Below the pieces are notes generated by a model, which worked only from the letters and a program-made list of their open reading frames with translations, did no database searches and was not told the origin of the DNA. A DNA stretch of 64,000 nucleotides, taken from positions 62,001 to 126,000 of the IMG/VR virus record IMGVR_UViG_3300047320_000285. One strand, written 5' to 3'. Shown here piece by piece: positions 6,942 through 63,057 of this stretch; position 1 is the first letter of the stretch; the number at the start of each line of letters is the position of its first letter. A program made the translations under genes and the position numbers.

Positions 6942-7052
6942 AATCGTGAGCTGCAACCTAAACAGCTCCTTTCTTTCGTGGGATTGACAGGATTACGGGG
7001 GTTCTGTCTCTTACTGACCATCCCCGATTATACTAGGAATAAGAATACAATC

Positions 7053-8930
7053 ATGAAGAAGAATATCATCGCAGTGGCAATTTTGGCTTCACTTGCTGTA
7101 TCGTCGGCATACGCAAATTGCGGTAATGGTGGTAGCAACGGGAATGGTTGCGGGGGCGAACAAGGACCGGCAGGCCCGCAAGGTCCCGCCGGTCCTCAGG
7201 GTCCGCAAGGTGTTGCGGGTCAGAACGGCAAGGACGGCGCGTCGGTTACTGGTGTCAGCATCAATGGCACTTCAGTCACGACAACGCTCTCCAATGGTTC
7301 GTCGGTGCAAGGTACGGTCACGGGGGTGGCTACGACTGCACAGCTGAACAGCACGAATAGCAACGTCGCGACGAACACGTCGAACATCACGACGCTGCAA
7401 GGTCAGGTTAGCCAGCAAGGCGGTGCAATCGCCGGTCTGCAGGTTAGTAGCGCCACGCACCAAGAAGTCGCTGACACGGCAGCCGGCACGCTGGCTGCCG
7501 CCAACGCCCACACGGATGCATCAGTGGGTGCAGAAGCGGCGCGCGCGAAGGGCGCCGAAGCAGGTCTGCAGTCGCAGATCAACGGCGTGAGCGGTACCGC
7601 CAACCAAGCGCTGGCGAATTCGAAGGACGCGCAGGCAACTGCGGGTCAAGCGAAGTCGATCGCGCAAGGCGCCGCGGCCACGGCTAACCAAGCCGAAGGC
7701 ATTGCAGTCGGTGCTGCTATCACAGCGACGGGTGCAGCGATCGTTGCCGGTCATGCAGAAGGCGTTGCTGAAAGTGCGGCCGCACAAGCCAAGTCGGCTA
7801 CGGCTACGGCGAACCATGCTGACTCAGTCGCCGGTCAAGCACTCGCAGCGGCGAAGGATGCCGACACGGATGCCGATGCGGCAGGCAAGGCAGCCGCACA
7901 CGCCCAAGGCACGGCAGACACAGCGCTGGCTTCGTCGGCACAAAACGCCAAGGACATCAAGTCCGAAGCGCAAGCCCGTGCAGCAGGCGATGCCGCCACG
8001 CTGAAGTCGGCCAATAGCTACACGGATTCGGCCGTGGCGAACGGGGTGTCGCAAGCAGAATCATACGCTGATGCTGGCGATGCCAAGACGCTGAATTCTG
8101 CGAACAAGCATGCGGACCAAGCCGCTGCGGCGGCCTACGTCGGTGCAGTCGCGACCTCGGCAGCTTACACGGATGCGACGGCGTCGAAGACGTTGAAGTC
8201 GGCGAATTCGTACACCGACAAAGCAGTTGGTGCCGAGTCTAGCCGCGCCCAATCGGCCGAAGGTCAACTGCAGTCCAACATCAATTCGGAATCGACTCGC
8301 GCGCAGACGGCTGAAGCTGGTCTGAACACGAAGATCGACAACGAAACGACGCGGGCGACGACAGCCGAAGCCGGGCTGCAAACCCAGATCAACGGGAACA
8401 GCCAGTCGATCACGCAAATCCAGTCGAACATGAACAAGGGCCAGATGGGTTCGGGCGCGCAAGTGCAATCGAACAACTCGGTGGCACTCGGTGCAGGTTC
8501 GGTGGCTGATCGTGACAACACGGTGTCGGTGGGTGCAGCAGGTGCCGAGCGTCAAGTGACGAACGTGGCAGCAGGTACGGCCGACACCGATGCGGTGAAC
8601 GTCGCGCAAGCTCGCTCGTACGCCCAGACGTCGTACCAGCAATCGACTGCTTACACGGATCAACGTGTGAACGCGCTGCAGAACTCGTTCGACAGCTTCA
8701 AGAAGGACACCTACGGTGGTCTGGCTTCGGTGCTGGCAATCGCGGGTCTGCCGCAACCGATCCAGAACGGCAAGTCGATGATCTCGGCGGCTGTCTCGAA
8801 CTACCACGGCGAGCAAGGTATTGCTGTCGGTATCTCAACCGTCCAAGGCAACTTCGTGATCAAGGCCGGTGTCTCCACGTCCACGCGCGGTGATGTCGGC
8901 GCAGTCGCTTCGGCAGGCTACCAGTTCTAA
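7053..8930 (+). CDS. YadA-family trimeric autotransporter adhesin with collagen-like segment
   Basis: Signal peptide [21 protein letters not shown]; (GXY)n; ANSYTD stalk repeats; [24 protein letters not shown] head-neck; beta-anchor ending GYQF. Confidence 0.9.
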
Positions 8931-40030: not shown

Positions 40031-40786
40031 ATGACTACCGCTACTGTGGAGAAGCAAGTCCCTGTGGATCTGGATTCTAACGTTCCTTTGACTCACGTGG
40101 CCTTGGAAGTCTTTCTGCATGAGAAGCTGGACATGCCGTCAGCGGCCATCTACGAAACCCGTGCCTATATTTCGAATCTGTTACTCGGTCGTAACCAGAA
40201 ACCGACCATGACAGATTCGATGATGGCCGAGCGCATGTACCAGAACCACGAATTCGATCGCTTCTGGTACTACCCAGAATGGACCACGCACGACGATCGA
40301 AGCTACACGCTGCACGTGCGGGTGGTGGAGCGTGAAGGTCATGTGCCGAAAGCGGCCGCTTTTGGGGACCTGATCTTTACCGTGGAATGGGAAGGAGGGA
40401 TGCGCGGTAACTGTGTGCTGGTCAGTGGCTGGACCCGTGACATCGTTTCGAACTTCGATGGCTTTCGAGTATTCGACGATTGCCAAGGGTTTGAAAGCAA
40501 CCGGTGCTGGCCGTGGGTCGTACGTTTGCCGCGCGACATTCGGGCATGGGCAGGCAATGCCTCGGCCGATTACTACGAGAAGTTCTTGGCCTACGCGCAG
40601 GAACTGATGACGCGAAAGGTGGCCGAGGAAGTCATGGTCAAATTGGCACCCCATTCCACAGGTGGACCGGGTCGTCCCGAGAAAGTGCGATTGATTGTAC
40701 AAATGCATCGCGGCCCCGTGCAGTTGGCGGGTTTTACGACAGTCGCGGAATTCAACGAAGTCCTCACCAAGGAACAGCAACAATGA
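40031..40786 (+). CDS. hypothetical protein
   Basis: AAGGAG RBS, 251 aa. Confidence 0.75.
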
Positions 40787-41286
40787 CACGCGTAGCACTG
40801 AAAACGAATCACGGCACGATCACCCTCGAACTCGACGCCGACAAAGCCCCGAAGTCGGTGGCGAACTTTCTCGAGTACGTCAAGAAGGGCCACTACGACG
40901 GCACGATCTTCCACCGGGTGATCGATGGCTTCATGATTCAAGGCGGTGGCTTCACGGAAAAGCTCGCGCAGCAAAAGCCCACCGAAGCCCCGATCGCGAA
41001 CGAAGCCAACAACGGCCTGAAAAACGACGCCGGCACGATCGCGATGGCGCGAACCAACGACCCGCACTCGGCCACCGCGCAGTTCTTTATCAACGTCAAC
41101 AACAACGACTTCCTCAACCACTCATCGCCGACCCCGCAAGGCTGGGGCTACGCGGTGTTCGGCCGTGTCGTCGAAGGTCTGGAGATCATCGAGGCCATCA
41201 AGAAGGTCAAGACCGGCTCGAAGGGCTTCCATCAGGACGTACCGATGGACGACGTGGTGATCGAATCAGCCGTCGTCGTCGAATAA
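40783..41286 (+). CDS. ppiB: cyclophilin-type peptidyl-prolyl cis-trans isomerase
   Basis: [47 protein letters not shown]. Confidence 0.95.
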
Positions 41287-41333
41287 GCTTTCATCTCGTA
41301 GTCCCCTACTGATCAATAAGGAGAACAGGCAAC

Positions 41334-42464
41334 ATGAGCGACGCAATTATCAAATACGAACGCACCGAGCAAGGTGTGCGCATTGTTCCCGTGTATCGGG
41401 AAGAAACGAAGGACTACTTCGTCGATCTGTCGAAGATCGCGCCATGGCTCGTTGAAGTCGATGGCGTCGAAGTACAGACCGCAGCCCTGAAGATCGGCAC
41501 GCTTTTCGATCTGCTTGGCATCAGCCAGACGCAGTCGTTGCTCGACACCGGCGTGCTCGACATGACCGATTCGCTCGACCCGAACATCGCGCTCGAATCG
41601 ATCTTCGTCGAAGCGAAGTATCCGGACGGCACGTCGAAAGTCCAGCGCTACGAACTCGTGCACGATACGGGTGATCAGCAGGTCGGCACGCAGTTCACGT
41701 TCTTGGCACAGAACCATCGCCAGCTGGAAGTGAGCTACCACACCAACACGCTGCTCTCGCCGTCGGCTAACTCAGCGATGGATCTGCATGTCGCCGGTAT
41801 CATCAACCTCCAGCTGGGTCACTGCGAACTGGTGGCCTCGGGCGTGCAAGCGGGTACGGAACCCGACGTCGAACACGAAGTGATCGGCTATACGCTCAAA
41901 GCTTTCCGCACGAACTACAACCGTCGGCCGGTTGAGATTCCGGCAGTCTGGCCGGAAGGCGAAGCAGTGTTGAAGCAGCCGGAAGCCGAGCAGGAAGCAG
42001 CACCGGAAACACCGGAAGTGATCAGCGCGTTCTCGGGTAAGGAATACATGCCGGGTTACTTCAACCAAGGCAAGCACATCACGTCCCACGAAGTCGAAGG
42101 TGCGGCCAGCAACCTGACGATCACGGTCGGCGATGAACCGGCCGTTCCCGGCAACGCCAACCACCGCTACGACATCACGGGTTTCGATACCGACTCGAAC
42201 GCATCGGAATACGAAGGTTCGTTTGCGCGTGCGTTGTCGATTCTGTTCCAGAACGGTCCGATCCCGTCGCATGGCAATAACGGTGTGACGCTCGAAGCGT
42301 TGCTCGCCGTGGCAGCACATCGTCTGGAAGGTTTCCAAGCGGGTCCGTTCGCTTCGCAGGACAACGAAGACGCCCTCAGTCACATCAAGATGGCGCTCGA
42401 AGCTTTGCAGCGCCGGACTCGCAATCGCATCGCCCGTGAGGTCGAGGGCACCTATCAAGCCTAA
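41334..42464 (+). CDS. fusion of phiKZ-type major-capsid-like domain and Tad1-like anti-defence sponge
   Basis: C-terminus GNANHRY..I.FQNGP....NGVT.E.LL.V..HRL..FQAGPFAS.DN..AL.HI..AL.....RT.NRI.R.VEGT matches the Tad1 pattern; N-terminus RIVPVYR..., DLLGISQT..LL..GV.D.TD.LDP.I.L, IGY.L.A.RTN.NRR recalls phiKZ gp120-family capsid. Confidence 0.75.
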   Translation: MSDAIIKYERTEQGVRIVPVYREETKDYFVDLSKIAPWLVEVDGVEVQTAALKIGTLFDLLGISQTQSLLDTGVLDMTDSLDPNIALESIFVEAKYPDGTSKVQRYELVHDTGDQQVGTQFTFLAQNHRQLEVSYHTNTLLSPSANSAMDLHVAGIINLQLGHCELVASGVQAGTEPDVEHEVIGYTLKAFRTNYNRRPVEIPAVWPEGEAVLKQPEAEQEAAPETPEVISAFSGKEYMPGYFNQGKHITSHEVEGAASNLTITVGDEPAVPGNANHRYDITGFDTDSNASEYEGSFARALSILFQNGPIPSHGNNGVTLEALLAVAAHRLEGFQAGPFASQDNEDALSHIKMALEALQRRTRNRIAREVEGTYQA

Positions 42465-42473
42465 GGAGGCAGC

Positions 42474-42878
42474 ATGTCCGAGAGTGCATTGGAAAGAACC
42501 ATTCGCGAAGCGTTTGAAGATGGTACGTTAGCCGTCTTGCGTACCCCTGAAGAACTCGGCGAATTGCTGGTGAGTACCCCCGGTGCACCATCGGGTACCC
42601 GGACGTTTCTCGTTACCGCGGTGGATGATCTGAACGAGTTGTCACCGGTGGAGGTTTTGGCAGGACAGGTGTTTGAAGCTCGGCGTGCCATGGCTCGTCA
42701 AATAGCTGATGGGACGGTCCCCCAAGATCATCCGATGGCGCATCGGTATTCGGGTCCGGGTTACACCGATGGCGTACATGAGTCGCAGCAACGGATTCTG
42801 GGGCAGTCGGTGGAAGTCCGGGTGGCGCATGTGCTGAACGCTGCTAAATGGGCGGTCATCGAACAGGGGGATCACTGA
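42474..42878 (+). CDS. hypothetical protein
   Basis: AAGGAGG RBS. Confidence 0.75.
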   Translation: MSESALERTIREAFEDGTLAVLRTPEELGELLVSTPGAPSGTRTFLVTAVDDLNELSPVEVLAGQVFEARRAMARQIADGTVPQDHPMAHRYSGPGYTDGVHESQQRILGQSVEVRVAHVLNAAKWAVIEQGDH

Positions 42879-46343: not shown

Positions 46344-46652
46344 ATGGGGTGGCGAAGAGGCCGCAAGATTTACGAGAGCCGTCCTGGGATGTTTATGTTT
46401 GACTGTCCCGGCTGTAAGTACGGGCATGCGTTCTACACCAAGGATGGTCCGGTAGTGAATGGCAAAGAACAGAACTGGACCTATAACGACGATGGGGATA
46501 AACCCACGATTTCGCCGAGTCTGGATGTGTGTCGCGATGACCCAGCCCATCACTGCCATTCGTTTATCCGTGATGGTATGATCCAGTTTTTAGGTGACTG
46601 CTTCCATTCTCTGAAGAATACGACGGTCGAGATCCCGGATTGGGATGACTGA
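46344..46652 (+). CDS. DUF6527-like Cys/His metal-binding protein
   Basis: F.CPGC..GH...W.YN.D.DKPT.SPSL....CHSFIRDG.IQFL.DC.H.L. Confidence 0.7.
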   Translation: MGWRRGRKIYESRPGMFMFDCPGCKYGHAFYTKDGPVVNGKEQNWTYNDDGDKPTISPSLDVCRDDPAHHCHSFIRDGMIQFLGDCFHSLKNTTVEIPDWDD

Positions 46653-57051: not shown

Positions 57052-58311
57052 TTACGAATGACGCTTGGCGAGGATGTCCTTGGTCATCTGGAAGAGCTTG
57101 TACGTCTCTTCCGACGGCTCTTCGTGCTGGTAAGCCGCCGCAGCCTTGTTCAGGAAGCTCAGGATCTTGTAGTACAGATTGAACGAGTCTGTGAACATAT
57201 ACGACTGGATCATCATCACCGCACTTTGCATCTGCGTGATGCGGCTACCGAACGTGCCCAGCGCATTCAGGTACTGCGACGAAAGCGTCTGACGATGTTT
57301 GCTGTTGATACCTTCAGCTTCCATCTTGTCGCCTTCAGTCGCCAGATCCGTGGCGTCCTTGATGCCCGCATCCAGCTGCGCTTGCACCGAGGTCAGTACG
57401 CCACTCCAACGATCGAGCAACGGACCGGTGTCGTTCATCGAAATGCGCGTGATGACCCGCTCCAGCTCATCAGACATGCGCACCAGATCGTAGATCTTCT
57501 CGCTCGAGTTGGTGGCATCCGGCAAGCTTTCCTTGGCGTCGCGTGCGGCCCACAACGCCTTGAGCATCACGTCGGTGCTGTCGCGATTGCTGTCGACCAA
57601 CGACTTGGACTTCTCGTCGTAGAACATACCGGTGTGCTGCTCGGTGAAAGGCTCACCGTTCACGTCCTTCAGCTTGACCTCGGTGATCACCTTCTTGAAC
57701 CACTCGTCCAGCGCGCTCAGTTGGGTGCTGATCTCGGTCAGGGCATTGCCATGCTCGAGTTCTTTCACCAGCTCCAGCAAGCTCTTCATGTACGGGCCAT
57801 CGACGAAAATGTCATTCTCGGTCGGGGTCAGGCCATGGAAGAACTCGGTGTCAAGCTTGTGGGAGGTGACGACCTCCTTGAAGGTCTTGGCTTCCCGCAA
57901 GTCCTTGGCGTCCTGCGCAGCAGAGACCACCAAGCGCGCACTGCCTTCTGCCGCGTGGATCTGCTCCTTGGTTTCTTTGGCGTTCTTCTTGCCGCCGAAC
58001 AAGGACTTCACCCAATCCACGCACTTGCGGATGATCCGCTTGAGCAGCTCGTACGCCTGACGATACAGCTCATTCAGACGCTTGGCGAACGACTCGGTGG
58101 CGATGGTGTAGCGTTTCTGCTTGCTACCCACGCTGTAGTAGGTGTCGAGCAGGCCGTTGTGACCCAGTACCGGAATCGACTCGAGTGCCAGTTCCGGGGT
58201 GAGCGTTTTGTTCTCTGCCAGTTGCTCGGAGATCTGCACGAAGTCCTGCACGTTTTCGTGCAGGCTCTCGACTTCTCCTTGCTCGGCAGACGTGTCGAAC
58301 ACGTCGTCCAT
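57052..58311 (-). CDS. phiKZ-like internal head protein paralog
   Basis: Acidic propeptide with ALE and IATES sites, then a K...W.K..F amphipathic helix. Confidence 0.7.
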   Translation of the reverse strand: MDDVFDTSAEQGEVESLHENVQDFVQISEQLAENKTLTPELALESIPVLGHNGLLDTYYSVGSKQKRYTIATESFAKRLNELYRQAYELLKRIIRKCVDWVKSLFGGKKNAKETKEQIHAAEGSARLVVSAAQDAKDLREAKTFKEVVTSHKLDTEFFHGLTPTENDIFVDGPYMKSLLELVKELEHGNALTEISTQLSALDEWFKKVITEVKLKDVNGEPFTEQHTGMFYDEKSKSLVDSNRDSTDVMLKALWAARDAKESLPDATNSSEKIYDLVRMSDELERVITRISMNDTGPLLDRWSGVLTSVQAQLDAGIKDATDLATEGDKMEAEGINSKHRQTLSSQYLNALGTFGSRITQMQSAVMMIQSYMFTDSFNLYYKILSFLNKAAAAYQHEEPSEETYKLFQMTKDILAKRHS

Positions 58312-58320
58312 TACAGCTCC

Positions 58321-59706
58321 TTATTTCTTGGCGTTCTTGGCGCGCGTTTTGACGTCGTTCATACGCTTGAGCAGGTCTTCCTTGCGCCGTCGGATCCGCT
58401 CCACTTCGTCTTGGAACTTCGGATCGATGTCGGCCATCGTGTCAGCGCCGAACGTCTCGAAGATCTCAAGGACGTAGTCCATCACGATTTCCACCAACGT
58501 CACCGCGGCGTCGAAGTGATCCTCGATCATCGCGTAGCCGGCAGCCACGTCCTGAATCGACTTACCGAAAGCCCGCACCGCTTCGAGGGTCGCGCGATCC
58601 AGATACGTCTGCGCGGGCAGGTTACCGTTCTCGACGGTCTTCTCGTCGATCAGGGCACCCGGGTTGGTGAAGCGCTTCTCGGCTTCACCGAGCGACTTCT
58701 GCACGTCCTCGAACATCTTCAGGTATTCGTCACGATAGCGCAGTGCGAGTTCATACGGCATCGAATGACCGAGGTTGCTGGCGATCTGAATCGCCTTGTC
58801 GACGTCGTCCGGCAGCTTGGCGCTTGCGGAGGCATCCTTGGCTTCGATCGCTTTCTGACGCGCATGCGTCAAGTCACCCAACACTTTCTCCACCCGCGCG
58901 TTGGTCAAACCCATGGCTGAGTCGACCTGCTGGCTGAACTTCTCCAGCGACTCCCGGGTGTACGGGACAATCTGGTCGTGCGTACCCGGACCGGCCGGTG
59001 CCTCGGCGTGACTGGCGTCGACCTTGTGGGCTTCTTGTTGCAGCTCGCGGTATTCTTGGCCGACGCCTTCAGCGATTTGACGCAGGTAGTTGCTGGTGTC
59101 TTTCTCGCATACCACGCCGATCAGGGTCTTGATGGCTTCCATGTAGGGGCCATCGACCAGCATGTCACGCTGCGCGTTATTCAGCTTGGCACCGAACTTC
59201 TCATCGAGTTTGTCGACATCGATGATGTTCTTCATCATCTTCTTGCCAGCGCGCTCCATCGCGACTTTGTCGCGCTTGAGGATGCCGAAGATTTCTTCCA
59301 GCAGCGTCGACATGTCGAGGTAAGCCTTGTAGACTTCCTTGTGCAATGGCCGACGCCGCTTGGTGCCACCCTTGCGCAGCCAGACGATGAAACCCTGCAT
59401 CAGCGCTTGGGAAGCGGCGATGACTCTGGCAATCAGGGCCCAGATCTTCTTGAGCACCGTTTTGACCGTGTCCTTCACCGACTCGGTGGCGACTGCGTCT
59501 TCCGTCGGAGTTTGACCCGTCAGGAACAGTTGCACGTCACCCGCTCGGCAGGCTTCGTCGATCCCACCCAGCGCCTCGTCCAGTTCTTCGAGGGCGGCCA
59601 GCGTTTCCTGCTGCTCAGCGGCCGCGCCCAACGGGACAGCCACAAACATGCCGTCCACTACTTGGACGGTTTCGCCTTCGAGGGCGAGCTTTAACAGACG
59701 ACCCAT
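58321..59706 (-). CDS. phiKZ-like internal head protein paralog
   Basis: AAGGAGG RBS; MGRLLKLALEGE.V.VV.GMF.AVP...VATES. Confidence 0.75.
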   Translation of the reverse strand: MGRLLKLALEGETVQVVDGMFVAVPLGAAAEQQETLAALEELDEALGGIDEACRAGDVQLFLTGQTPTEDAVATESVKDTVKTVLKKIWALIARVIAASQALMQGFIVWLRKGGTKRRRPLHKEVYKAYLDMSTLLEEIFGILKRDKVAMERAGKKMMKNIIDVDKLDEKFGAKLNNAQRDMLVDGPYMEAIKTLIGVVCEKDTSNYLRQIAEGVGQEYRELQQEAHKVDASHAEAPAGPGTHDQIVPYTRESLEKFSQQVDSAMGLTNARVEKVLGDLTHARQKAIEAKDASASAKLPDDVDKAIQIASNLGHSMPYELALRYRDEYLKMFEDVQKSLGEAEKRFTNPGALIDEKTVENGNLPAQTYLDRATLEAVRAFGKSIQDVAAGYAMIEDHFDAAVTLVEIVMDYVLEIFETFGADTMADIDPKFQDEVERIRRRKEDLLKRMNDVKTRAKNAKK

Positions 59707-59716
59707 CTCGCCCTCC

Positions 59717-60844
59717 TTAAGCGGTTTCGAAATCGAACTTGAAGTCGAAATCCTTGAACCTGAATTCCTTGAACAAGTTCTGCATGTCGTGATCAAAGAA
59801 GCCGTCGAGTTCGGCGTTGATCTCTTCCACCACGTCTTTCTCGCCCTTGTGGGCGGACTTGGTGCGACTGAGCGCTTCCTTGCGGAACGCGATGATCTCG
59901 CCCACCAGCCCCCATGTATCGGCTTCGAAGCGGGTCATGTAATTCACCGCCGACATGTAGAGCTTGATCATTTCCCAGTAACGGCGCAGCACTTCAGTCA
60001 ACTGCCCATCAGCACCTTCCACGCCCTTATTCGCCAGCGCACTGGCTCGCTTGGAAATCTCGCCGACGATATGATCACACTTCTCGAGCGTGAGCTTCCA
60101 GTTGCCGGAGATCGTGAAGATGTTCAGCGTTTTGAGCCAGCCGGTCACGCCGTTGATGGTACCGATTTGCTCATGGATGTTCTCCGGGAAGGACGGCTTG
60201 TCGCTGTCGACCTTATCCATCGCCTCTTTGGCCACGCTCATGGCCGCATTCATCGGCTCGACGCACTCGGCGAAGACCTTACGCATCTTCTCGGCTTCGG
60301 CCAGTTGAGCCTCTTGGTTGCCCGGGGTGTTGATCACGTTGACAAACGAGTTGACCACATCGACAATCGCTTGTCGGTGGCCGTTATTCGACAACAGCGC
60401 TGTGATCTTGACGATGGCATCCTTGTAGCCGGGATTGGTCAAGACGGTCTTTTTCTCCACCGAGAGCTTGTCCCAGAACTTCTCACCCAGTCCGTCAGCC
60501 TTGATCACCGAGTTGACCTTGTCTTCCACCGTCAGCGGCCGGCGCTCGGTGAACTTCTTGGCGAGCAGCTCATACTGGCGCCGCACCTCCTCGGTCATGG
60601 TGCGGTCTTTGCTGGTGCGACCGGTGATATGGTTGATAAAGCCTTTGATAGCCGCCGCAATCGCAGCCGCAATCTTGGCAATCACTTCCCAGACTTTCTG
60701 ACCGGCTTTCTTGAGGGTCTCGCCAAACGCTTCGGTCGAGATCGCTTGGACGTCTTCGCCCATACCGATCGGCACGCCAATGAACATACCCTCGACGATC
60801 TCGACCTGTTCGCCTTCTAGAGCGACTTTCAACATACGGTTCAT
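59717..60844 (-). CDS. phiKZ-like internal head protein paralog
   Basis: MNRMLKVALEGEQVEIVEGMFIGVP...ISTEAFGE. Confidence 0.75.
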   Translation of the reverse strand: MNRMLKVALEGEQVEIVEGMFIGVPIGMGEDVQAISTEAFGETLKKAGQKVWEVIAKIAAAIAAAIKGFINHITGRTSKDRTMTEEVRRQYELLAKKFTERRPLTVEDKVNSVIKADGLGEKFWDKLSVEKKTVLTNPGYKDAIVKITALLSNNGHRQAIVDVVNSFVNVINTPGNQEAQLAEAEKMRKVFAECVEPMNAAMSVAKEAMDKVDSDKPSFPENIHEQIGTINGVTGWLKTLNIFTISGNWKLTLEKCDHIVGEISKRASALANKGVEGADGQLTEVLRRYWEMIKLYMSAVNYMTRFEADTWGLVGEIIAFRKEALSRTKSAHKGEKDVVEEINAELDGFFDHDMQNLFKEFRFKDFDFKFDFETA

Positions 60845-60847
60845 GGC

Positions 60848-61906
60848 TTAGCCTTTCAGTTTGATTTTCTTCAGTTCCTCGAGCTGAGCGCCCAGCTCGT
60901 CCTTCAGACCGGGGTACGTTTGGACCGTCATCTCGAGTGCGCGAATCCGTGTGCTGATAATCTTGTTCAGCGCGTTGATCGCCGTCCATTCGAGATCGAA
61001 CAGCTTGTTCAGCCCACTGATAATCTGTTTGACTGCGCGCCAATAAACGTTAAACGCCTGCGCCGACTGCTTCGCGGCTTCCGTGGCCGCCTCGGTGCGC
61101 TGACCAAAAAGTTCAGTCTGGAACTGCTCGAGACTCTTTTCCAGCTCGGGCAAGATGTCGTCTTCGTACTTGTTGAGTACGCCCGTGCGTAAGTTGCTAT
61201 GCAGCAGCTCATTCGAGGTCCGCAAGCTGGCGACGATCTCGTCGATCTTGATGGGGACTTCCAGTTCCTTCGCATCGATCTTCGCCGCGTGCTGCGTACC
61301 TGCGGTGCGAAGCGTCGCGATCTTGTCCAGCAGCTTTTGCACTTCACTATCGGGCTTGTGCGTAGGCTTCTGACCTTCGTTAAGCGCGTATTTGAAGTCG
61401 TCCTTCAACATACGCACCCCGTCGCGCAACAGCGTACGGGCGGTGGCGGACTCCGCGACCTTCTCGAGTTCCAGCAAGGCCTTGAAGTTATCCGAACCGC
61501 TCACCAGATCGTATTCGTCTTGATCGAACTGGGTACGGGTCGTGCCGTGGTTGTCGGCGTTCCAGACCGATTCGATCTTTTCTTCCGAGGTGGTGCGGCG
61601 CAGCTCGGTGACCGCTTTGAGCGCCAGGCCATACTCGCGTCGCACTTCATCGCTCAGCGTGCGGTTGCGACCGCCGCCGTGGCGGAACCACTTGATGAAG
61701 CCCTTGACCGCCGCGATGGCACCGGCAATCAGTTTCGCCAGCATCTCCCATGCTGCCTTACCGGCCGATTTGACGGCGTCACCGAATGATTCCGTCGACA
61801 GGGCCCGCACGTCCTCAGCTGCGCCAACCGGCACGGCCACAAACATACCCTCGATGACTTCAATGGTTTCGCCCTCGAGGGCGAGGCGCAGTGCGCGATT
61901 GTTCAT
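60848..61906 (-). CDS. phiKZ-like internal head protein paralog
   Basis: MNNRALRLALEGETIEVIEGMFVAVP...LSTESFGD. Confidence 0.75.
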   Translation of the reverse strand: MNNRALRLALEGETIEVIEGMFVAVPVGAAEDVRALSTESFGDAVKSAGKAAWEMLAKLIAGAIAAVKGFIKWFRHGGGRNRTLSDEVRREYGLALKAVTELRRTTSEEKIESVWNADNHGTTRTQFDQDEYDLVSGSDNFKALLELEKVAESATARTLLRDGVRMLKDDFKYALNEGQKPTHKPDSEVQKLLDKIATLRTAGTQHAAKIDAKELEVPIKIDEIVASLRTSNELLHSNLRTGVLNKYEDDILPELEKSLEQFQTELFGQRTEAATEAAKQSAQAFNVYWRAVKQIISGLNKLFDLEWTAINALNKIISTRIRALEMTVQTYPGLKDELGAQLEELKKIKLKG

Positions 61907-61920
61907 GATTGATCCTTGTA

Positions 61921-63057
61921 TCAGTCGCGCGGGCCACCGGCCCCACGCATGTGTTTCAGTTTTGCTGCATCCATTTTAAAGCGTCGATCGAGTTCGACGA
62001 TGCGATCCAGCACCGTTTCCCGATCCTTGTATTCGTCCATGGTGCGCTTGACCACCGCCTTCCAGAAGTCAATCACTGTGTCGGTCAGCTGGAAGACACC
62101 GCTGCGCAGCTGGTCAAGCATCGCCAAAGCCTTCAGGATAGGCTGCAATTCCTTCCAGAACGCCGCATAGCCGTCCAGCATGGTCTTGGCCTTAGTACGG
62201 AGTGCCTCATCGGTGCTCGCCCGTTCTGTAGCCTGTGTATGGCGCTGCGCCAGCTCCAGATCTTTCTCGATCAGTTCGATTTCTTTCTCCCACCGCATGA
62301 ATGTTTCCACGGTAGCCGAGCCGGAGAGCGTCTGAGCCATCGCCGCCAATACTGCGGCCAGCTTGTCTGGGTTCGCAGGCAGCCGATCAGTGCCTTTGTT
62401 CTTGTAGGCCACCGCAATCAGGTCGTGGATGGTCTGTAGTTTCTCAGGCAGACTTTCGAATTGAGCATGCACGGAGTCGATCTGCTTTTGCACGTTCTGG
62501 GTATCATCGTCTTGCAACGGGTGGCTGGGTCCGAGCTTGGCGAGTGCCACCAACATCGCACTGGCCTTGACCACTTCGCTCTGGTTGCCGGTGTCGAGCA
62601 TCTTCTCGACTGCTGCCACCGTCCCCAAGTAGGCCTTGGGGTCATCCAGCAAGGCGTGAGCGGTCGCAGACAGCTTGGCCGAATACTGCTTATCCAGACC
62701 ATCGGCTTTTGCCACTGACTCCATGCGCGAGTCCGGATCAGCATCTTTGAAGCCGCGGATGGTTTCTTCCATCACCTCGTACTGATGGACGATCTCTTTG
62801 TTGATCTTGCGACCCCGATCGCCCTTGACCTTGTTGAACAGCCACTTGGCGACACCTTTGATGGTAGCCAGCACCGCAGCGATCAGTTTAGCGATCTTGG
62901 CCCAGATGGCGCGAGCCACGCCTTCCACCTTCTCGCCCAACGATTCCGTTGACAGCGCGAGCATGTCTTCCTGCGCACTCAGTGGCACCGCAATAAACAT
63001 CCCTTCAACAATCTCGACCTGCTCGCCTTCCAACGCGAGCTTGAGCAAACGTCCCAT
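61921..63057 (-). CDS. phiKZ-like internal head protein paralog
   Basis: MGRLLKLALEGEQVEIVEGMFIAVP...LSTESLGE. Confidence 0.75.
   Translation of the reverse strand: MGRLLKLALEGEQVEIVEGMFIAVPLSAQEDMLALSTESLGEKVEGVARAIWAKIAKLIAAVLATIKGVAKWLFNKVKGDRGRKINKEIVHQYEVMEETIRGFKDADPDSRMESVAKADGLDKQYSAKLSATAHALLDDPKAYLGTVAAVEKMLDTGNQSEVVKASAMLVALAKLGPSHPLQDDDTQNVQKQIDSVHAQFESLPEKLQTIHDLIAVAYKNKGTDRLPANPDKLAAVLAAMAQTLSGSATVETFMRWEKEIELIEKDLELAQRHTQATERASTDEALRTKAKTMLDGYAAFWKELQPILKALAMLDQLRSGVFQLTDTVIDFWKAVVKRTMDEYKDRETVLDRIVELDRRFKMDAAKLKHMRGAGGPRD

What the first reader, a model, noticed from the sequence alone, without database searches (positions are those of the whole stretch)
41334..42464. Major-capsid-like domain fused to a Tad1-like immune-signal sponge
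Seen: a two-domain protein with an acidic linker (EAEQEAAPETPE). The C-terminal ~115 aa reproduce the Tad1 signature (HxY..., FQxG, GV..E/DLL..V..RL..FQAGPF.S..N..AL.H...AL.....R...RI.R.V.GT). Established: Tad1 proteins sequester Thoeris gcADPR and several CBASS cyclic oligonucleotides. The N-terminal ~200 aa recall, from memory, an internal segment of the phiKZ gp120-family major capsid protein (RIVPVYR, DL.G.SQT..LL..G..D.TD..DP...L, GY.L.A.RTN.NRR). Inference: the fusion could be a capsid-mimic decoy that docks on capsid-sensing TIR/CD-NTase sensors and soaks up the signal at its source, or it could tether the sponge to assembling capsids. I know of no described architecture like this.
Basis: partly seen in the sequence, partly recalled or inferred. 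Interest (0 to 1): 0.85.

Follow-up and report, generated by a model that had tools for sequence, protein, structure and literature searches.

The report
Capsid I-domain copy fused to Tad1
A giant bacteriophage encodes a protein joining a stand-alone copy of the outer "insertion" domain of its capsid protein to a Tad1 immune-signal sponge, and the same capsid-domain copy is repeatedly linked to sponges and a cyclophilin in related phages, suggesting it works as an address label for counter-defence cargo.

Summary
ORF 41334-42464 (+, 376 aa) is a real two-domain protein.

- **N-terminal domain (residues ~10-199):** a copy of the insertion (I) domain of phiKZ-type major capsid proteins (Pfam PF25620, E=5e-26). 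A profile of such copies aligns to phiKZ gp120 residues 252-470; the I domain is 248-472. It lacks the HK97 core, so it is not a capsid protein.
- **C-terminal domain (residues ~230-376):** a Tad1 domain (PDB Tad1 E~5e-12, fold TM 0.84). All four gcADPR/dinucleotide pocket residues are invariant across the family. The two cyclic-trinucleotide residues are not conserved.

The architecture is only partly new. phiKZ gp184 is already known as a capsid-anchored, injected Tad1, but its anchor is unrelated.

What appears undescribed:
- The I-domain copy belongs to a large family of free-standing paralogues that lie outside the MCP clade.
- It is fused to Tad1 in either order, to Tad2, and to cyclophilin.
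- Cyclophilin, I-domain and Tad1 are always adjacent or fused, in four different arrangements.

Best reading: a working sponge carried by an MCP/capsid-addressing module. Packaging and injection are not supported here. The linkers show no enrichment of protease sites, and 201phi2-1 gp106 carries no virion flag.

The parts
40786..41286 (+). Cyclophilin-type peptidyl-prolyl isomerase gene (166 aa), immediately upstream. It is the third member of the linked trio.
   Evidence: Pfam Pro_isomerase E=2.5e-50. The [13 protein letters not shown] motif is visible. The same gene lies directly upstream of the fusion in L004. It is fused to Tad1 in FLC9, L014 and L015, and fused to I-domain plus Tad1 in L002.
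41318..41324 (+). Ribosome-binding site AAGGAGA, 9 nt before the ATG
   Evidence: Read directly from the sequence.
41334..42464 (+). Complete ORF, 376 aa: I-domain paralogue, acidic linker, Tad1 domain
   Evidence: AF2 model with mean pLDDT 85.8 shows two folded domains.
41334..41930 (+). N-terminal domain (residues 1-199): paralogue of the phiKZ-type MCP insertion (I) domain
   Evidence: PF25620 profile positions 143-267, E=5e-26. Profile A3 aligns to phiKZ gp120 residues 252-470, E=3.7e-23; the I domain is residues 248-472 (PMC11297242). Foldseek against phiKp24 and phiKZ MCP. Lies outside the MCP clade in the tree.
41928..42020 (+). Flexible acidic, proline-rich linker (residues ~199-229; 8 D+E against 1 K+R)
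   Evidence: pLDDT is 51-61 in this stretch. Composition and a single S/A-x-E site (APE, residues 223-225) are.
42021..42464 (+). Tad1 sponge domain (residues 230-376) plus stop codon. It includes an ordered N-terminal extension, ISAFSGKEY, and the pocket residues F334, N344, R361 and R365.
   Evidence: Pocket residues are defined in 10.1101/2023.11.15.567273.
42474..42878 (+). Downstream 134-aa gene of unknown function, conserved next to the module in distant relatives
   Evidence: 46.5% identity to FLC9 gp129 and 42% to the L002 neighbour. No Pfam or PHROG hit.

Best explanation
The gene encodes a long-form Tad1 counter-defence protein of a ~254-kb jumbo phage.

The C-terminal domain is a working Tad1 sponge. 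It sequesters the Thoeris signal gcADPR (3'cADPR), and probably some CBASS cyclic dinucleotides, in the dimer-interface pocket. It probably does not bind cyclic trinucleotides.

The N-terminal domain is a member of an old family of free-standing paralogues of the capsid protein's outer I domain. I infer that it acts as an address label. It would use the same kind of I-domain contacts that pair MCP subunits across capsomers to place its cargo on the phage's own major capsid protein or on assembling capsids. Here the cargo is the sponge; in relatives it is a cyclophilin, Tad2 or other domains. This would put the sponge where capsid-triggered TIR or CD-NTase signalling starts.

Shown: the domain identities, the conserved pocket, and the recurrent linkage. 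Inferred: ligand binding, and any binding of the I-domain copy to MCP or capsid.
For: **Tad1 domain**
- Sequence matches: E~5e-12 to solved Tad1 and 2e-15 to phiKZ gp184.
- Fold match: TM 0.82-0.84 to CbTad1.
- The equivalents of CbTad1 F82, N92, R109 and R113, whose mutation abolishes gcADPR and 2',3'-cGAMP binding, are F334, N344, R361 and R365. They are invariant in 16 fusions, and F334, N344, R361 and R365 are at least 90% conserved across 63 long Tad1 proteins.

**I-domain**
- Evidence as listed in the parts section.
- In phiKZ, I domains of neighbouring capsomers form dimers, which provides a plausible homotypic binding mode.

**Recurrent coupling**
- I-domain copies are fused to Tad1 C-terminally (14 proteins), to Tad1 N-terminally (P0152, P0166), to the unrelated sponge Tad2 (P0081; PF11195 at 35.8 bits against a cut-off of 25), and to cyclophilin plus Tad1 (P0014, P0016).
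- The trio is adjacent or fused in all six Tad1-bearing loci examined, in three arrangements. A seventh locus, L005, has cyclophilin and the I-domain copy one gene apart and no Tad1.
- Fusions arise at three or four places on the I-domain tree.

**Precedent and rationale**
- phiKZ anchors its Tad1 to the capsid.
- Type I Thoeris is reported to be triggered by the capsid.
Against: - No binding was tested.
- In a mature T=27 lattice every I domain is already paired, so there is no obvious vacant site.
- The free copy in 201phi2-1 (gp106) lies among non-structural genes. It is not flagged as a virion protein in a record that does flag mass-spectrometry-detected virion proteins.
- No small I-domain chain appears in any solved jumbo-phage capsid.
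- Some partners of I-domain copies are not sponges. One group is P-loop-like and others are unknown, so the module is not specific to anti-signalling.
- The window phage's own MCP could not be retrieved.
Confidence: 0.45

Rival explanations
1. Virion-delivered sponge, as for phiKZ gp184. The I-domain would take the protein into the procapsid, the prohead protease would cut the linker, and the free Tad1 domain would be injected with the DNA so that it is present before any signal is made.
For: - phiKZ gp184/Tad1 is a minor capsid protein of the inner vertex complex. It is cleaved by gp175 and is reported to be injected.
- Jumbo-phage head proteins lose long N-terminal propeptides after A/S-x-E.
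- This phage probably has phiKZ-style internal head proteins carrying an N-terminal ALE|GE motif.
- The window protein has one A-P-E site in its flexible linker.
Against: - S/A-x-E sites in the linkers of 16 fusions number 15, against 18.2 expected from composition. Six of the 16 have none, and the APE site is not conserved.
- The I domain is an external capsid domain, whereas injected cargo must be inside.
- Tad1 can lie on either side of the I-domain, which does not fit N-terminal propeptide logic.
- The N-terminus shows no similarity to the gp184 anchor.
- 201phi2-1 gp106 carries no virion flag.
Confidence: 0.2
2. Capsid-mimic decoy. The free I-domain would bind host sensors that recognise the exposed part of the MCP (for example Thoeris ThsB or CBASS CD-NTase partners). 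It would either block them or bring the sponge to the active sensor.
For: - The copy is fused to two unrelated sponge families, which suggests it takes part in anti-signalling itself.
- The capsid is implicated as a trigger of type I Thoeris.
- The copies are non-structural by gene context.
Against: - The copies form an old clade separate from MCP I domains. The best MCP match is 35-50% identical over a part of the domain only, which makes for poor mimicry.
- A mimic that binds an activating sensor would be expected to trigger it.
- Many copies carry no defence-related partner.
- There is no evidence that any sensor recognises the I domain.
Confidence: 0.15
3. The I-domain copy and the cyclophilin form a capsid-protein folding or assembly helper pair. 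Tad1 is only genetically hitched to that module, or uses the I-domain as a neutral scaffold, with no functional coupling.
For: - Cyclophilin and the I-domain copy lie one gene apart, with no Tad1, in L005.
- Free copies without any partner are the commonest form: 43 cluster representatives.
- Cyclophilin is always the N-terminal partner.
Against: - Independent fusions to Tad1 in both orders and to Tad2 are hard to explain by drift alone.
- The fusions are kept in a clade spanning 50-80% identity.
Confidence: 0.15
4. The Tad1-like domain is a structural or otherwise non-sponge domain in this lineage.
For: - The cyclic-trinucleotide residues are not conserved: R90 is Q342 and T97 is S349.
- The lid residue L119 is E371 and the loop residue R57 is I310.
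Against: - The four residues shown by mutagenesis to be needed for gcADPR and cGAMP binding are invariant.
- phiKZ gp184, which also lacks R90 and T97, is treated in the literature as an active Tad1.
Confidence: 0.05

Closest known systems
Tad1 (Thoeris anti-defence 1; CbTad1 PDB 7UAV/7UAW/8SMD, CmTad1 8KBB; Pfam PF24729 Acb2_Tad1_hairpin)
   Same: - Same fold: a beta-sheet plus two long C-terminal helices.
- 31% identity to CbTad1 in the structural alignment.
- The four gcADPR/CDN pocket residues are conserved.
   Different: - Canonical Tad1 is a single domain of about 120-140 aa. Here it is the C-terminal third of a 376-aa protein.
- The cyclic-trinucleotide residues R90 and T97 are replaced by Q and S.
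- The lid residue L119 is replaced by E.
phiKZ gp184 / Tad1 (PDB 8Y6V chain I; minor capsid protein of the inner vertex-binding complex)
   Same: - A jumbo-phage Tad1 with an N-terminal extension and a C-terminal Tad1 domain, 37% identical over 100 residues.
- It couples a sponge to the capsid.
- It also lacks R90 and T97.
   Different: - The gp184 N-terminal part is an acidic region followed by a small beta segment, and it is unrelated to the I-domain.
- gp184 sits on the inner capsid surface, is protease-processed and is reported to be injected. None of this is shown here.
- The linkers here carry no conserved cleavage motif.
I (insertion) domain of phiKZ-type major capsid proteins (gp120 residues 248-472; also phiKp24 MCP, PDB 8BFL)
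   Same: Homologous over the whole domain, with shared motifs at both ends and the same fold.
   Different: - It is free of the HK97 N-arm, P and A domains, so it cannot form a shell.
- It belongs to a separate paralogue clade.
Burkholderia phage FLC9 gp132 + gp131; 201phi2-1 gp106; Xanthomonas phage RTH11 WJJ55076
   Same: - FLC9 gp132 is a free I-domain copy. FLC9 gp131 is a cyclophilin-Tad1 fusion, 54% identical to our C-terminal part.
- 201phi2-1 gp106 and the RTH11 protein are free I-domain copies in cultured phages.
   Different: - The same three modules are split differently: I-domain | Cyp-Tad1, rather than Cyp | I-domain-Tad1.
- All of these are annotated only as hypothetical proteins.
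T4 capsid-targeting sequence fusions (IPIII CTS)
   Same: The concept of a phage-encoded address element that takes a cargo protein to the capsid.
   Different: The T4 CTS is a 10-residue N-terminal peptide removed by gp21. Here the address is a folded 190-aa domain that can sit on either side of the cargo.

Membership tests
Tad1 sponge family | Significant sequence similarity to experimentally characterised Tad1 proteins | tested here: met
   phmmer against the PDB: CbTad1 E=4.6e-12, CmTad1 E=3.4e-8, phiKZ gp184 E=2.1e-15. phrog_2428 E=5.7e-29. Precomputed PF24729 hit.
Tad1 sponge family | Tad1 fold: N-terminal antiparallel beta-sheet followed by two long helices | tested here: met
   The AF2 model has strands at 262-305 and helices at 320-336 and 342-367, with pLDDT above 90. 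Foldseek against CbTad1: target TM 0.82-0.84, E=1e-7.
Tad1 sponge family | gcADPR / cyclic-dinucleotide pocket residues (CbTad1 F82, N92, R109, R113) | tested here: met
   They align to F334, N344, R361 and R365. These are invariant in 16 fusions and at least 90% conserved in 63 long Tad1 proteins. The residues are defined.
Tad1 sponge family | Cyclic-trinucleotide pocket and hexamer residues (CbTad1 R90, T97) | tested here: not met
   R90 aligns to Q342 and T97 to S349. Neither column is conserved in the family. This feature is not universal in Tad1; phiKZ gp184 has E and N at these positions.
Tad1 sponge family | Binds gcADPR and inhibits Thoeris in vivo; homo-oligomer (dimer or hexamer) | not testable with these tools
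   This needs ITC or native PAGE, plaque assays and SEC-MALS. No multimer prediction tool was available.
phiKZ-type HK97-fold major capsid protein (PF25620) | Hit to the family profile above the gathering threshold | tested here: met
   88-91 bits against a cut-off of 27. However, only profile positions 143-267 of 635 are matched.
phiKZ-type HK97-fold major capsid protein (PF25620) | HK97 core: N-arm, P domain, A domain | tested here: not met
   The matches stop at the I-domain borders: gp120 residues 252-470, against the I domain at 248-472. The rest of the protein is linker plus Tad1. It is therefore not an MCP.
phiKZ gp184-type capsid-anchored, injected Tad1 | N-terminal capsid wedge homologous to gp184 residues 1-110 | tested here: not met
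   BLASTP aligns only residues 275-374 to gp184 residues 128-227 and finds nothing in the N-terminal parts. 8y6v_I is absent from the fold hits.
phiKZ gp184-type capsid-anchored, injected Tad1 | Prohead-protease (S/A-x-E) site between anchor and Tad1 | tested here: inconclusive
   There is one APE site in the window protein's linker. Across 16 fusions there are 15 sites against 18.2 expected, and six fusions have none.
phiKZ gp184-type capsid-anchored, injected Tad1 | Presence in virions and delivery into the host | not testable with these tools
   No proteome exists for this uncultured phage. The only indirect datum is that 201phi2-1 gp106 (a free I-domain copy) is not flagged as a virion protein.
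Free-standing MCP I-domain paralogues (undescribed; e.g. 201phi2-1 gp106, FLC9 gp132) | End-to-end similarity to 170-230-aa I-domain-only proteins and placement outside the MCP clade | tested here: met
   Free copies match query residues 15-200 in a single stretch. In the tree, 77 of 78 MCPs form one clade (SH-aLRT 94) and the copies lie outside it. The window clade is sister to the free copy P0021, with support 97. gp106 against profile A3: probability 98.5%.

The most novel reading that the evidence does not exclude
Free-standing paralogues of the capsid I domain are a general addressing module of jumbo phages. They would dock counter-defence cargo (Tad1, Tad2, a cyclophilin and several still unidentified domains) onto the major capsid protein, which is the very molecule that triggers TIR and cGAS-like sensors. 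Immune signals would then be captured at their source.

If so, the unidentified domains fused to I-domain copies (the P0047, P0088 and P0136 groups, and P0150) would be new anti-defence proteins that can be found by this association.
Probability: 0.2. Interest if true: 0.8.

Novelty: new variant of a known kind. Interest (0 to 1): 0.62.

Why it matters
Sponge proteins are usually thought of as small, free, soluble oligomers. phiKZ gp184 showed that a jumbo phage can tie Tad1 to its capsid.

This locus shows a second, independent way of doing so. The anchor here is derived from the capsid protein itself. The same anchor is reused for an unrelated sponge (Tad2) and for a cyclophilin.

If the I-domain copy really addresses cargo to MCP or capsids, three things follow:
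- It gives a testable model for spatially targeted signal sequestration.
- It gives a handle for finding new counter-defence domains by their fusion partner.
- It assigns a first function to a large family of hypothetical proteins present in cultured model phages (201phi2-1 gp106, FLC9 gp132, and copies in RP12, pEt-SU and RTH11).

Tried and rejected
- **The phage's own MCP or further paralogues in the window:** tblastn of both halves against the window found nothing.
- **Close relatives in deposited phages:** megablast of the region found no match. In protein mode, no record covered at least 80% of the query.
- **A stand-alone Tad1 in L005:** the 139-aa gene between cyclophilin and the I-domain copy is not Tad1. 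BLASTP and PHROGs gave nothing.
- **PHROG and Pfam scans of ten large window ORFs:** almost nothing, so the phage type rests on indirect hints.
- **Identity of the unknown N-terminal partners of I-domain copies:** only weak P-loop-like leads for one group and nothing for the others.
- **Neighbourhoods of free I-domain genes:** uninformative, with all neighbours unknown.
- **The best-scoring MCP, P0064:** it comes from a 213-kb contig of another lineage.
- **Literature:**
  - The Nature 2024 Tad1/Tad2 paper and Thomas et al. 2012 are not held. The gp184 cleavage site and the phiKZ Tad1 biochemistry therefore rest on secondary citations.
  - The preprint version does not mention phiKZ.
  - No paper links Tad1 with cyclophilin.
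  - The 'gp106' found in PMC10643120 belongs to PhiPA3, not 201phi2-1.
- **Local Pfam copy:** it did not report PF24729 for the C-terminal domain, although the precomputed tables do.
- **ISAFSGxEY as a protease site:** rejected, because this segment is ordered in the model and is part of the Tad1 domain.
Full report
**1. The observation**

The ORF at 41334..42464 (+) is real. It has an ATG start, encodes 376 codons with no internal stop, and has an AAGGAGA ribosome-binding site 9 nt upstream.

**2. The C-terminal domain is Tad1**

- *Sequence.* A phmmer search of the PDB puts residues 266-373 on Clostridium botulinum prophage Tad1 (7UAV, 8KBx; E~5e-12) and CmTad1 (E=3e-8). Residues 273-375 match phiKZ gp184 (8Y6V chain I) at E=2e-15. 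PHROG 2428 matches at E=5.7e-29. The precomputed Pfam family is PF24729, Acb2_Tad1_hairpin.
- *Fold.* An AlphaFold2 model built on a 63-sequence alignment has mean pLDDT 85.8. It shows a beta-sheet followed by two long helices. Foldseek superposes this domain on CbTad1 with target-normalised TM 0.82-0.84.
- *Ligand pocket.* The Tad1 paper (10.1101/2023.11.15.567273) shows that F82A/N92A and R109A/R113A abolish binding of gcADPR and 2',3'-cGAMP. It also shows that R90 and T97 hold cyclic trinucleotides at the hexamer's three-fold interface.
  - The offset between the PDB construct and native numbering is +1. Eight named residues check out under this offset.
  - On that basis F82, N92, R109 and R113 align to F334, N344, R361 and R365.
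  - These four are invariant in 16 fusion proteins and at least 90% conserved across 63 long Tad1 proteins.
  - R90 and T97 align to Q342 and S349, and neither column is conserved. phiKZ gp184 has E and N at these positions.
- *Conclusion.* I expect gcADPR binding, and perhaps dinucleotide binding, but not the canonical cA3 site.

**3. The N-terminal domain is the MCP insertion domain, not 'a capsid protein'**

- Pfam PhiKZ_MCP hits residues 13-138 at E=5e-26, but only on profile positions 143-267 of 635.
- PDB MCPs match at E=1e-11 (36ZA, 11BT), 8.5e-6 (phiKZ gp120) and 4e-5 (phiKp24).
- Foldseek aligns about 230 columns to the phiKp24 and phiKZ MCPs at E=1e-12 and 2.6e-11.
- The phiKZ capsid paper (PMC11297242) defines the I domain as residues 248-472. 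It is an elaboration of the HK97 E-loop, and it forms I-domain dimers between neighbouring capsomers.
- A profile of 33 free or fused copies aligns to gp120 residues 252-470 in one stretch (E=3.7e-23), and to nothing else in the PDB apart from other jumbo-phage MCPs.
- The N-arm, P domain and A domain are absent.

**4. The copy belongs to an old, widespread paralogue family**

- An exhaustive phmmer search with residues 1-205 found 469 cluster representatives. Many are 170-230-aa proteins that match residues 15-200 end to end. True MCPs of about 720-750 aa match mainly over the first 130 residues or so.
- In a maximum-likelihood tree of 155 I-domains, 77 of 78 MCP domains form one clade (SH-aLRT 94). 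The free, extended and fused copies lie outside it.
- The window's group of 13 fusions is sister to a free copy, P0021 (support 97-98).
- The N-terminal half is therefore not a recent duplicate of this phage's MCP. That MCP is not in the window and could not be retrieved.
- Free copies also exist in cultured phages:
  - Xanthomonas phage RTH11, a 179-aa protein.
  - Burkholderia phage FLC9 gp132.
  - By fold, proteins in 201phi2-1, pEt-SU, RP12 and Phabio.
- 201phi2-1 gp106 was confirmed as a copy by profile-profile comparison (probability 98.5%, E=2e-15).

**5. The fusion recurs, and the modules are shuffled**

The large-database search found the following:
- 14 I-domain-Tad1 proteins.
- Two triple fusions, cyclophilin-I-domain-Tad1 (P0014, P0016).
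- Seven cyclophilin-Tad1 proteins, including FLC9 gp131.
- Free I-domain copies.
- Many Tad1 proteins with other N-terminal extensions.

The contigs carrying these genes are mostly 230-330 kb.

| Loci | Gene order |
|---|---|
| Window, L004 | cyclophilin \| I-domain-Tad1 |
| FLC9, L014, L015 | I-domain \| cyclophilin-Tad1 |
| L002 | cyclophilin-I-domain-Tad1 in a single ORF |
| L005 | cyclophilin \| unknown 139-aa gene \| I-domain, no Tad1 |

- The surrounding genes are syntenic, so these are fusions and fissions in place.
- Further representatives show Tad1-X-I-domain in the reversed order (P0152, P0166) and a compact I-domain-Tad1 (P0186).
- P0081 is a Tad2-like domain fused N-terminally to an I-domain copy. 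PF11195 scores 35.8 bits against a cut-off of 25, and all four top PDB hits are Tad2 proteins, though at weak E-values. Its contig carries a chimallin gene two genes away.
- Tad1 and Tad2 are unrelated folds, so the I-domain copy has been coupled to immune-signal sponges independently.
- Other partners are a small P-loop-like domain and unidentified domains.

**6. What is already known**

- phiKZ gp184 is a minor capsid protein of the inner vertex-binding complex and is processed by the head protease gp175 (PMC11297242).
- Later papers call it Tad1, wedged into the capsid by its N-terminus, with the C-terminus released and injected (10.1101/2025.11.23.690004 and PMC13282480).
- A capsid-coupled Tad1 is therefore not new.
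- The gp184 N-terminal part is an acidic region plus a small beta segment. It shows no similarity to the I-domain.
- I found no paper that mentions an MCP-derived domain, or a cyclophilin, fused to Tad1.

**7. Mechanism**

- *Well supported by sequence and fold:* the Tad1 domain is a sponge for gcADPR.
- *Inferred:* the I-domain copy is an addressing module that binds MCP or capsids through I-domain-type contacts. The basis for this inference is:
  - its origin in the capsid protein;
  - the I-domain dimers seen in phiKZ;
  - its repeated use as a partner for different cargo on either side;
  - the phiKZ precedent;
  - the report that the capsid triggers type I Thoeris.
- *Against the specific 'packaged, cleaved, injected' version:*
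  - The flexible linker (residues ~199-228, pLDDT 51-61) carries only one S/A-x-E site, and it is not conserved.
  - Across 16 fusions such sites number 15, against 18.2 expected, and six linkers have none.
  - The conserved ISAFSGxEY segment is ordered and belongs to the Tad1 domain.
  - The I domain is external in the capsid.
  - 201phi2-1 gp106 lies between the nuclear-shell gene and a non-virion RNA polymerase gene. It lacks the 'identified as virion protein by mass spectrometry' note that this record gives to real virion proteins.
- The decoy idea and a cyclophilin/I-domain assembly-helper role remain possible.

**8. Verdict**

Its mechanistic ideas are untested, and its novelty claim is only partly right. 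The locus is a new variant of a known kind, a capsid-coupled Tad1. It also exposes a wider pattern that appears undescribed: free-standing capsid I-domain paralogues serve as recurrent partners of sponges and of a cyclophilin in jumbo phages.

Noticed in passing
window 6978-8930 (+): A 650-aa ORF ends in a YadA-like membrane anchor domain (PF03895, E=1.6e-14, above the gathering score). This is the beta-barrel anchor of trimeric autotransporter adhesins, which is unusual in a phage genome.
   Followed up: no
window 57052-63057 (-): A tandem array of four or five paralogous genes of 350-490 aa. They share the N-terminal motif LLK(L/V)ALEGE.V..VEGMF and have a weak phiKZ internal-head-protein hit (PF12699). 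The ALE|G motif fits the A/S-x-E prohead-protease motif, so these are probably processed internal head or ejection proteins.
   Followed up: partly
window 42474-42878 (+): A 134-aa gene directly downstream, with no family hit. It is conserved next to the Tad1 module in FLC9 (gp129, 46.5% identity) and in L002 (42%).
   Followed up: partly
L010 769-1674 (protein P0081): A Tad2-like domain fused to an I-domain copy, two genes upstream of a chimallin gene. This is a second, unrelated sponge family on the same carrier.
   Followed up: partly
L016 727-1293 (Pseudomonas phage 201phi2-1 gp106): This 'hypothetical protein' of a model nucleus-forming phage is a free I-domain paralogue (hhalign probability 98.5%). 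It sits between the nuclear shell gene gp105 and the non-virion RNAP gene gp107, and it is not flagged as a virion protein.
   Followed up: yes
proteins P0152, P0166, P0116, and the P0047/P0069/P0077, P0088/P0092/P0094 and P0136/P0193/P0198/P0154 groups: Other I-domain architectures were seen: Tad1-X-I-domain in reversed order, a tandem double I-domain (P0116), and three groups with unidentified 90-120-aa N-terminal domains. One of these groups is weakly P-loop/kinase-like.
   Followed up: partly
window 46344-46652 (+); also L002 2630-3043, L004 10198-10506, L005 4412-4735, L014 533-922: A small gene whose relatives carry Pfam PF20137 (BubE) recurs within a few kb of the cyclophilin / I-domain / Tad1 module in all lineages. 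A cpYpsA (SLOG-type nucleotide-binding) gene lies nearby in L005 and, faintly, in L002. The region may be a counter-defence island.
   Followed up: no
L008 2663-3316 (Bacillus phage AgentSmith gene 56): A 217-aa gene annotated 'putative major capsid protein' sits directly upstream of the real 716-aa MCP gene. It may be another partial MCP paralogue.
   Followed up: no
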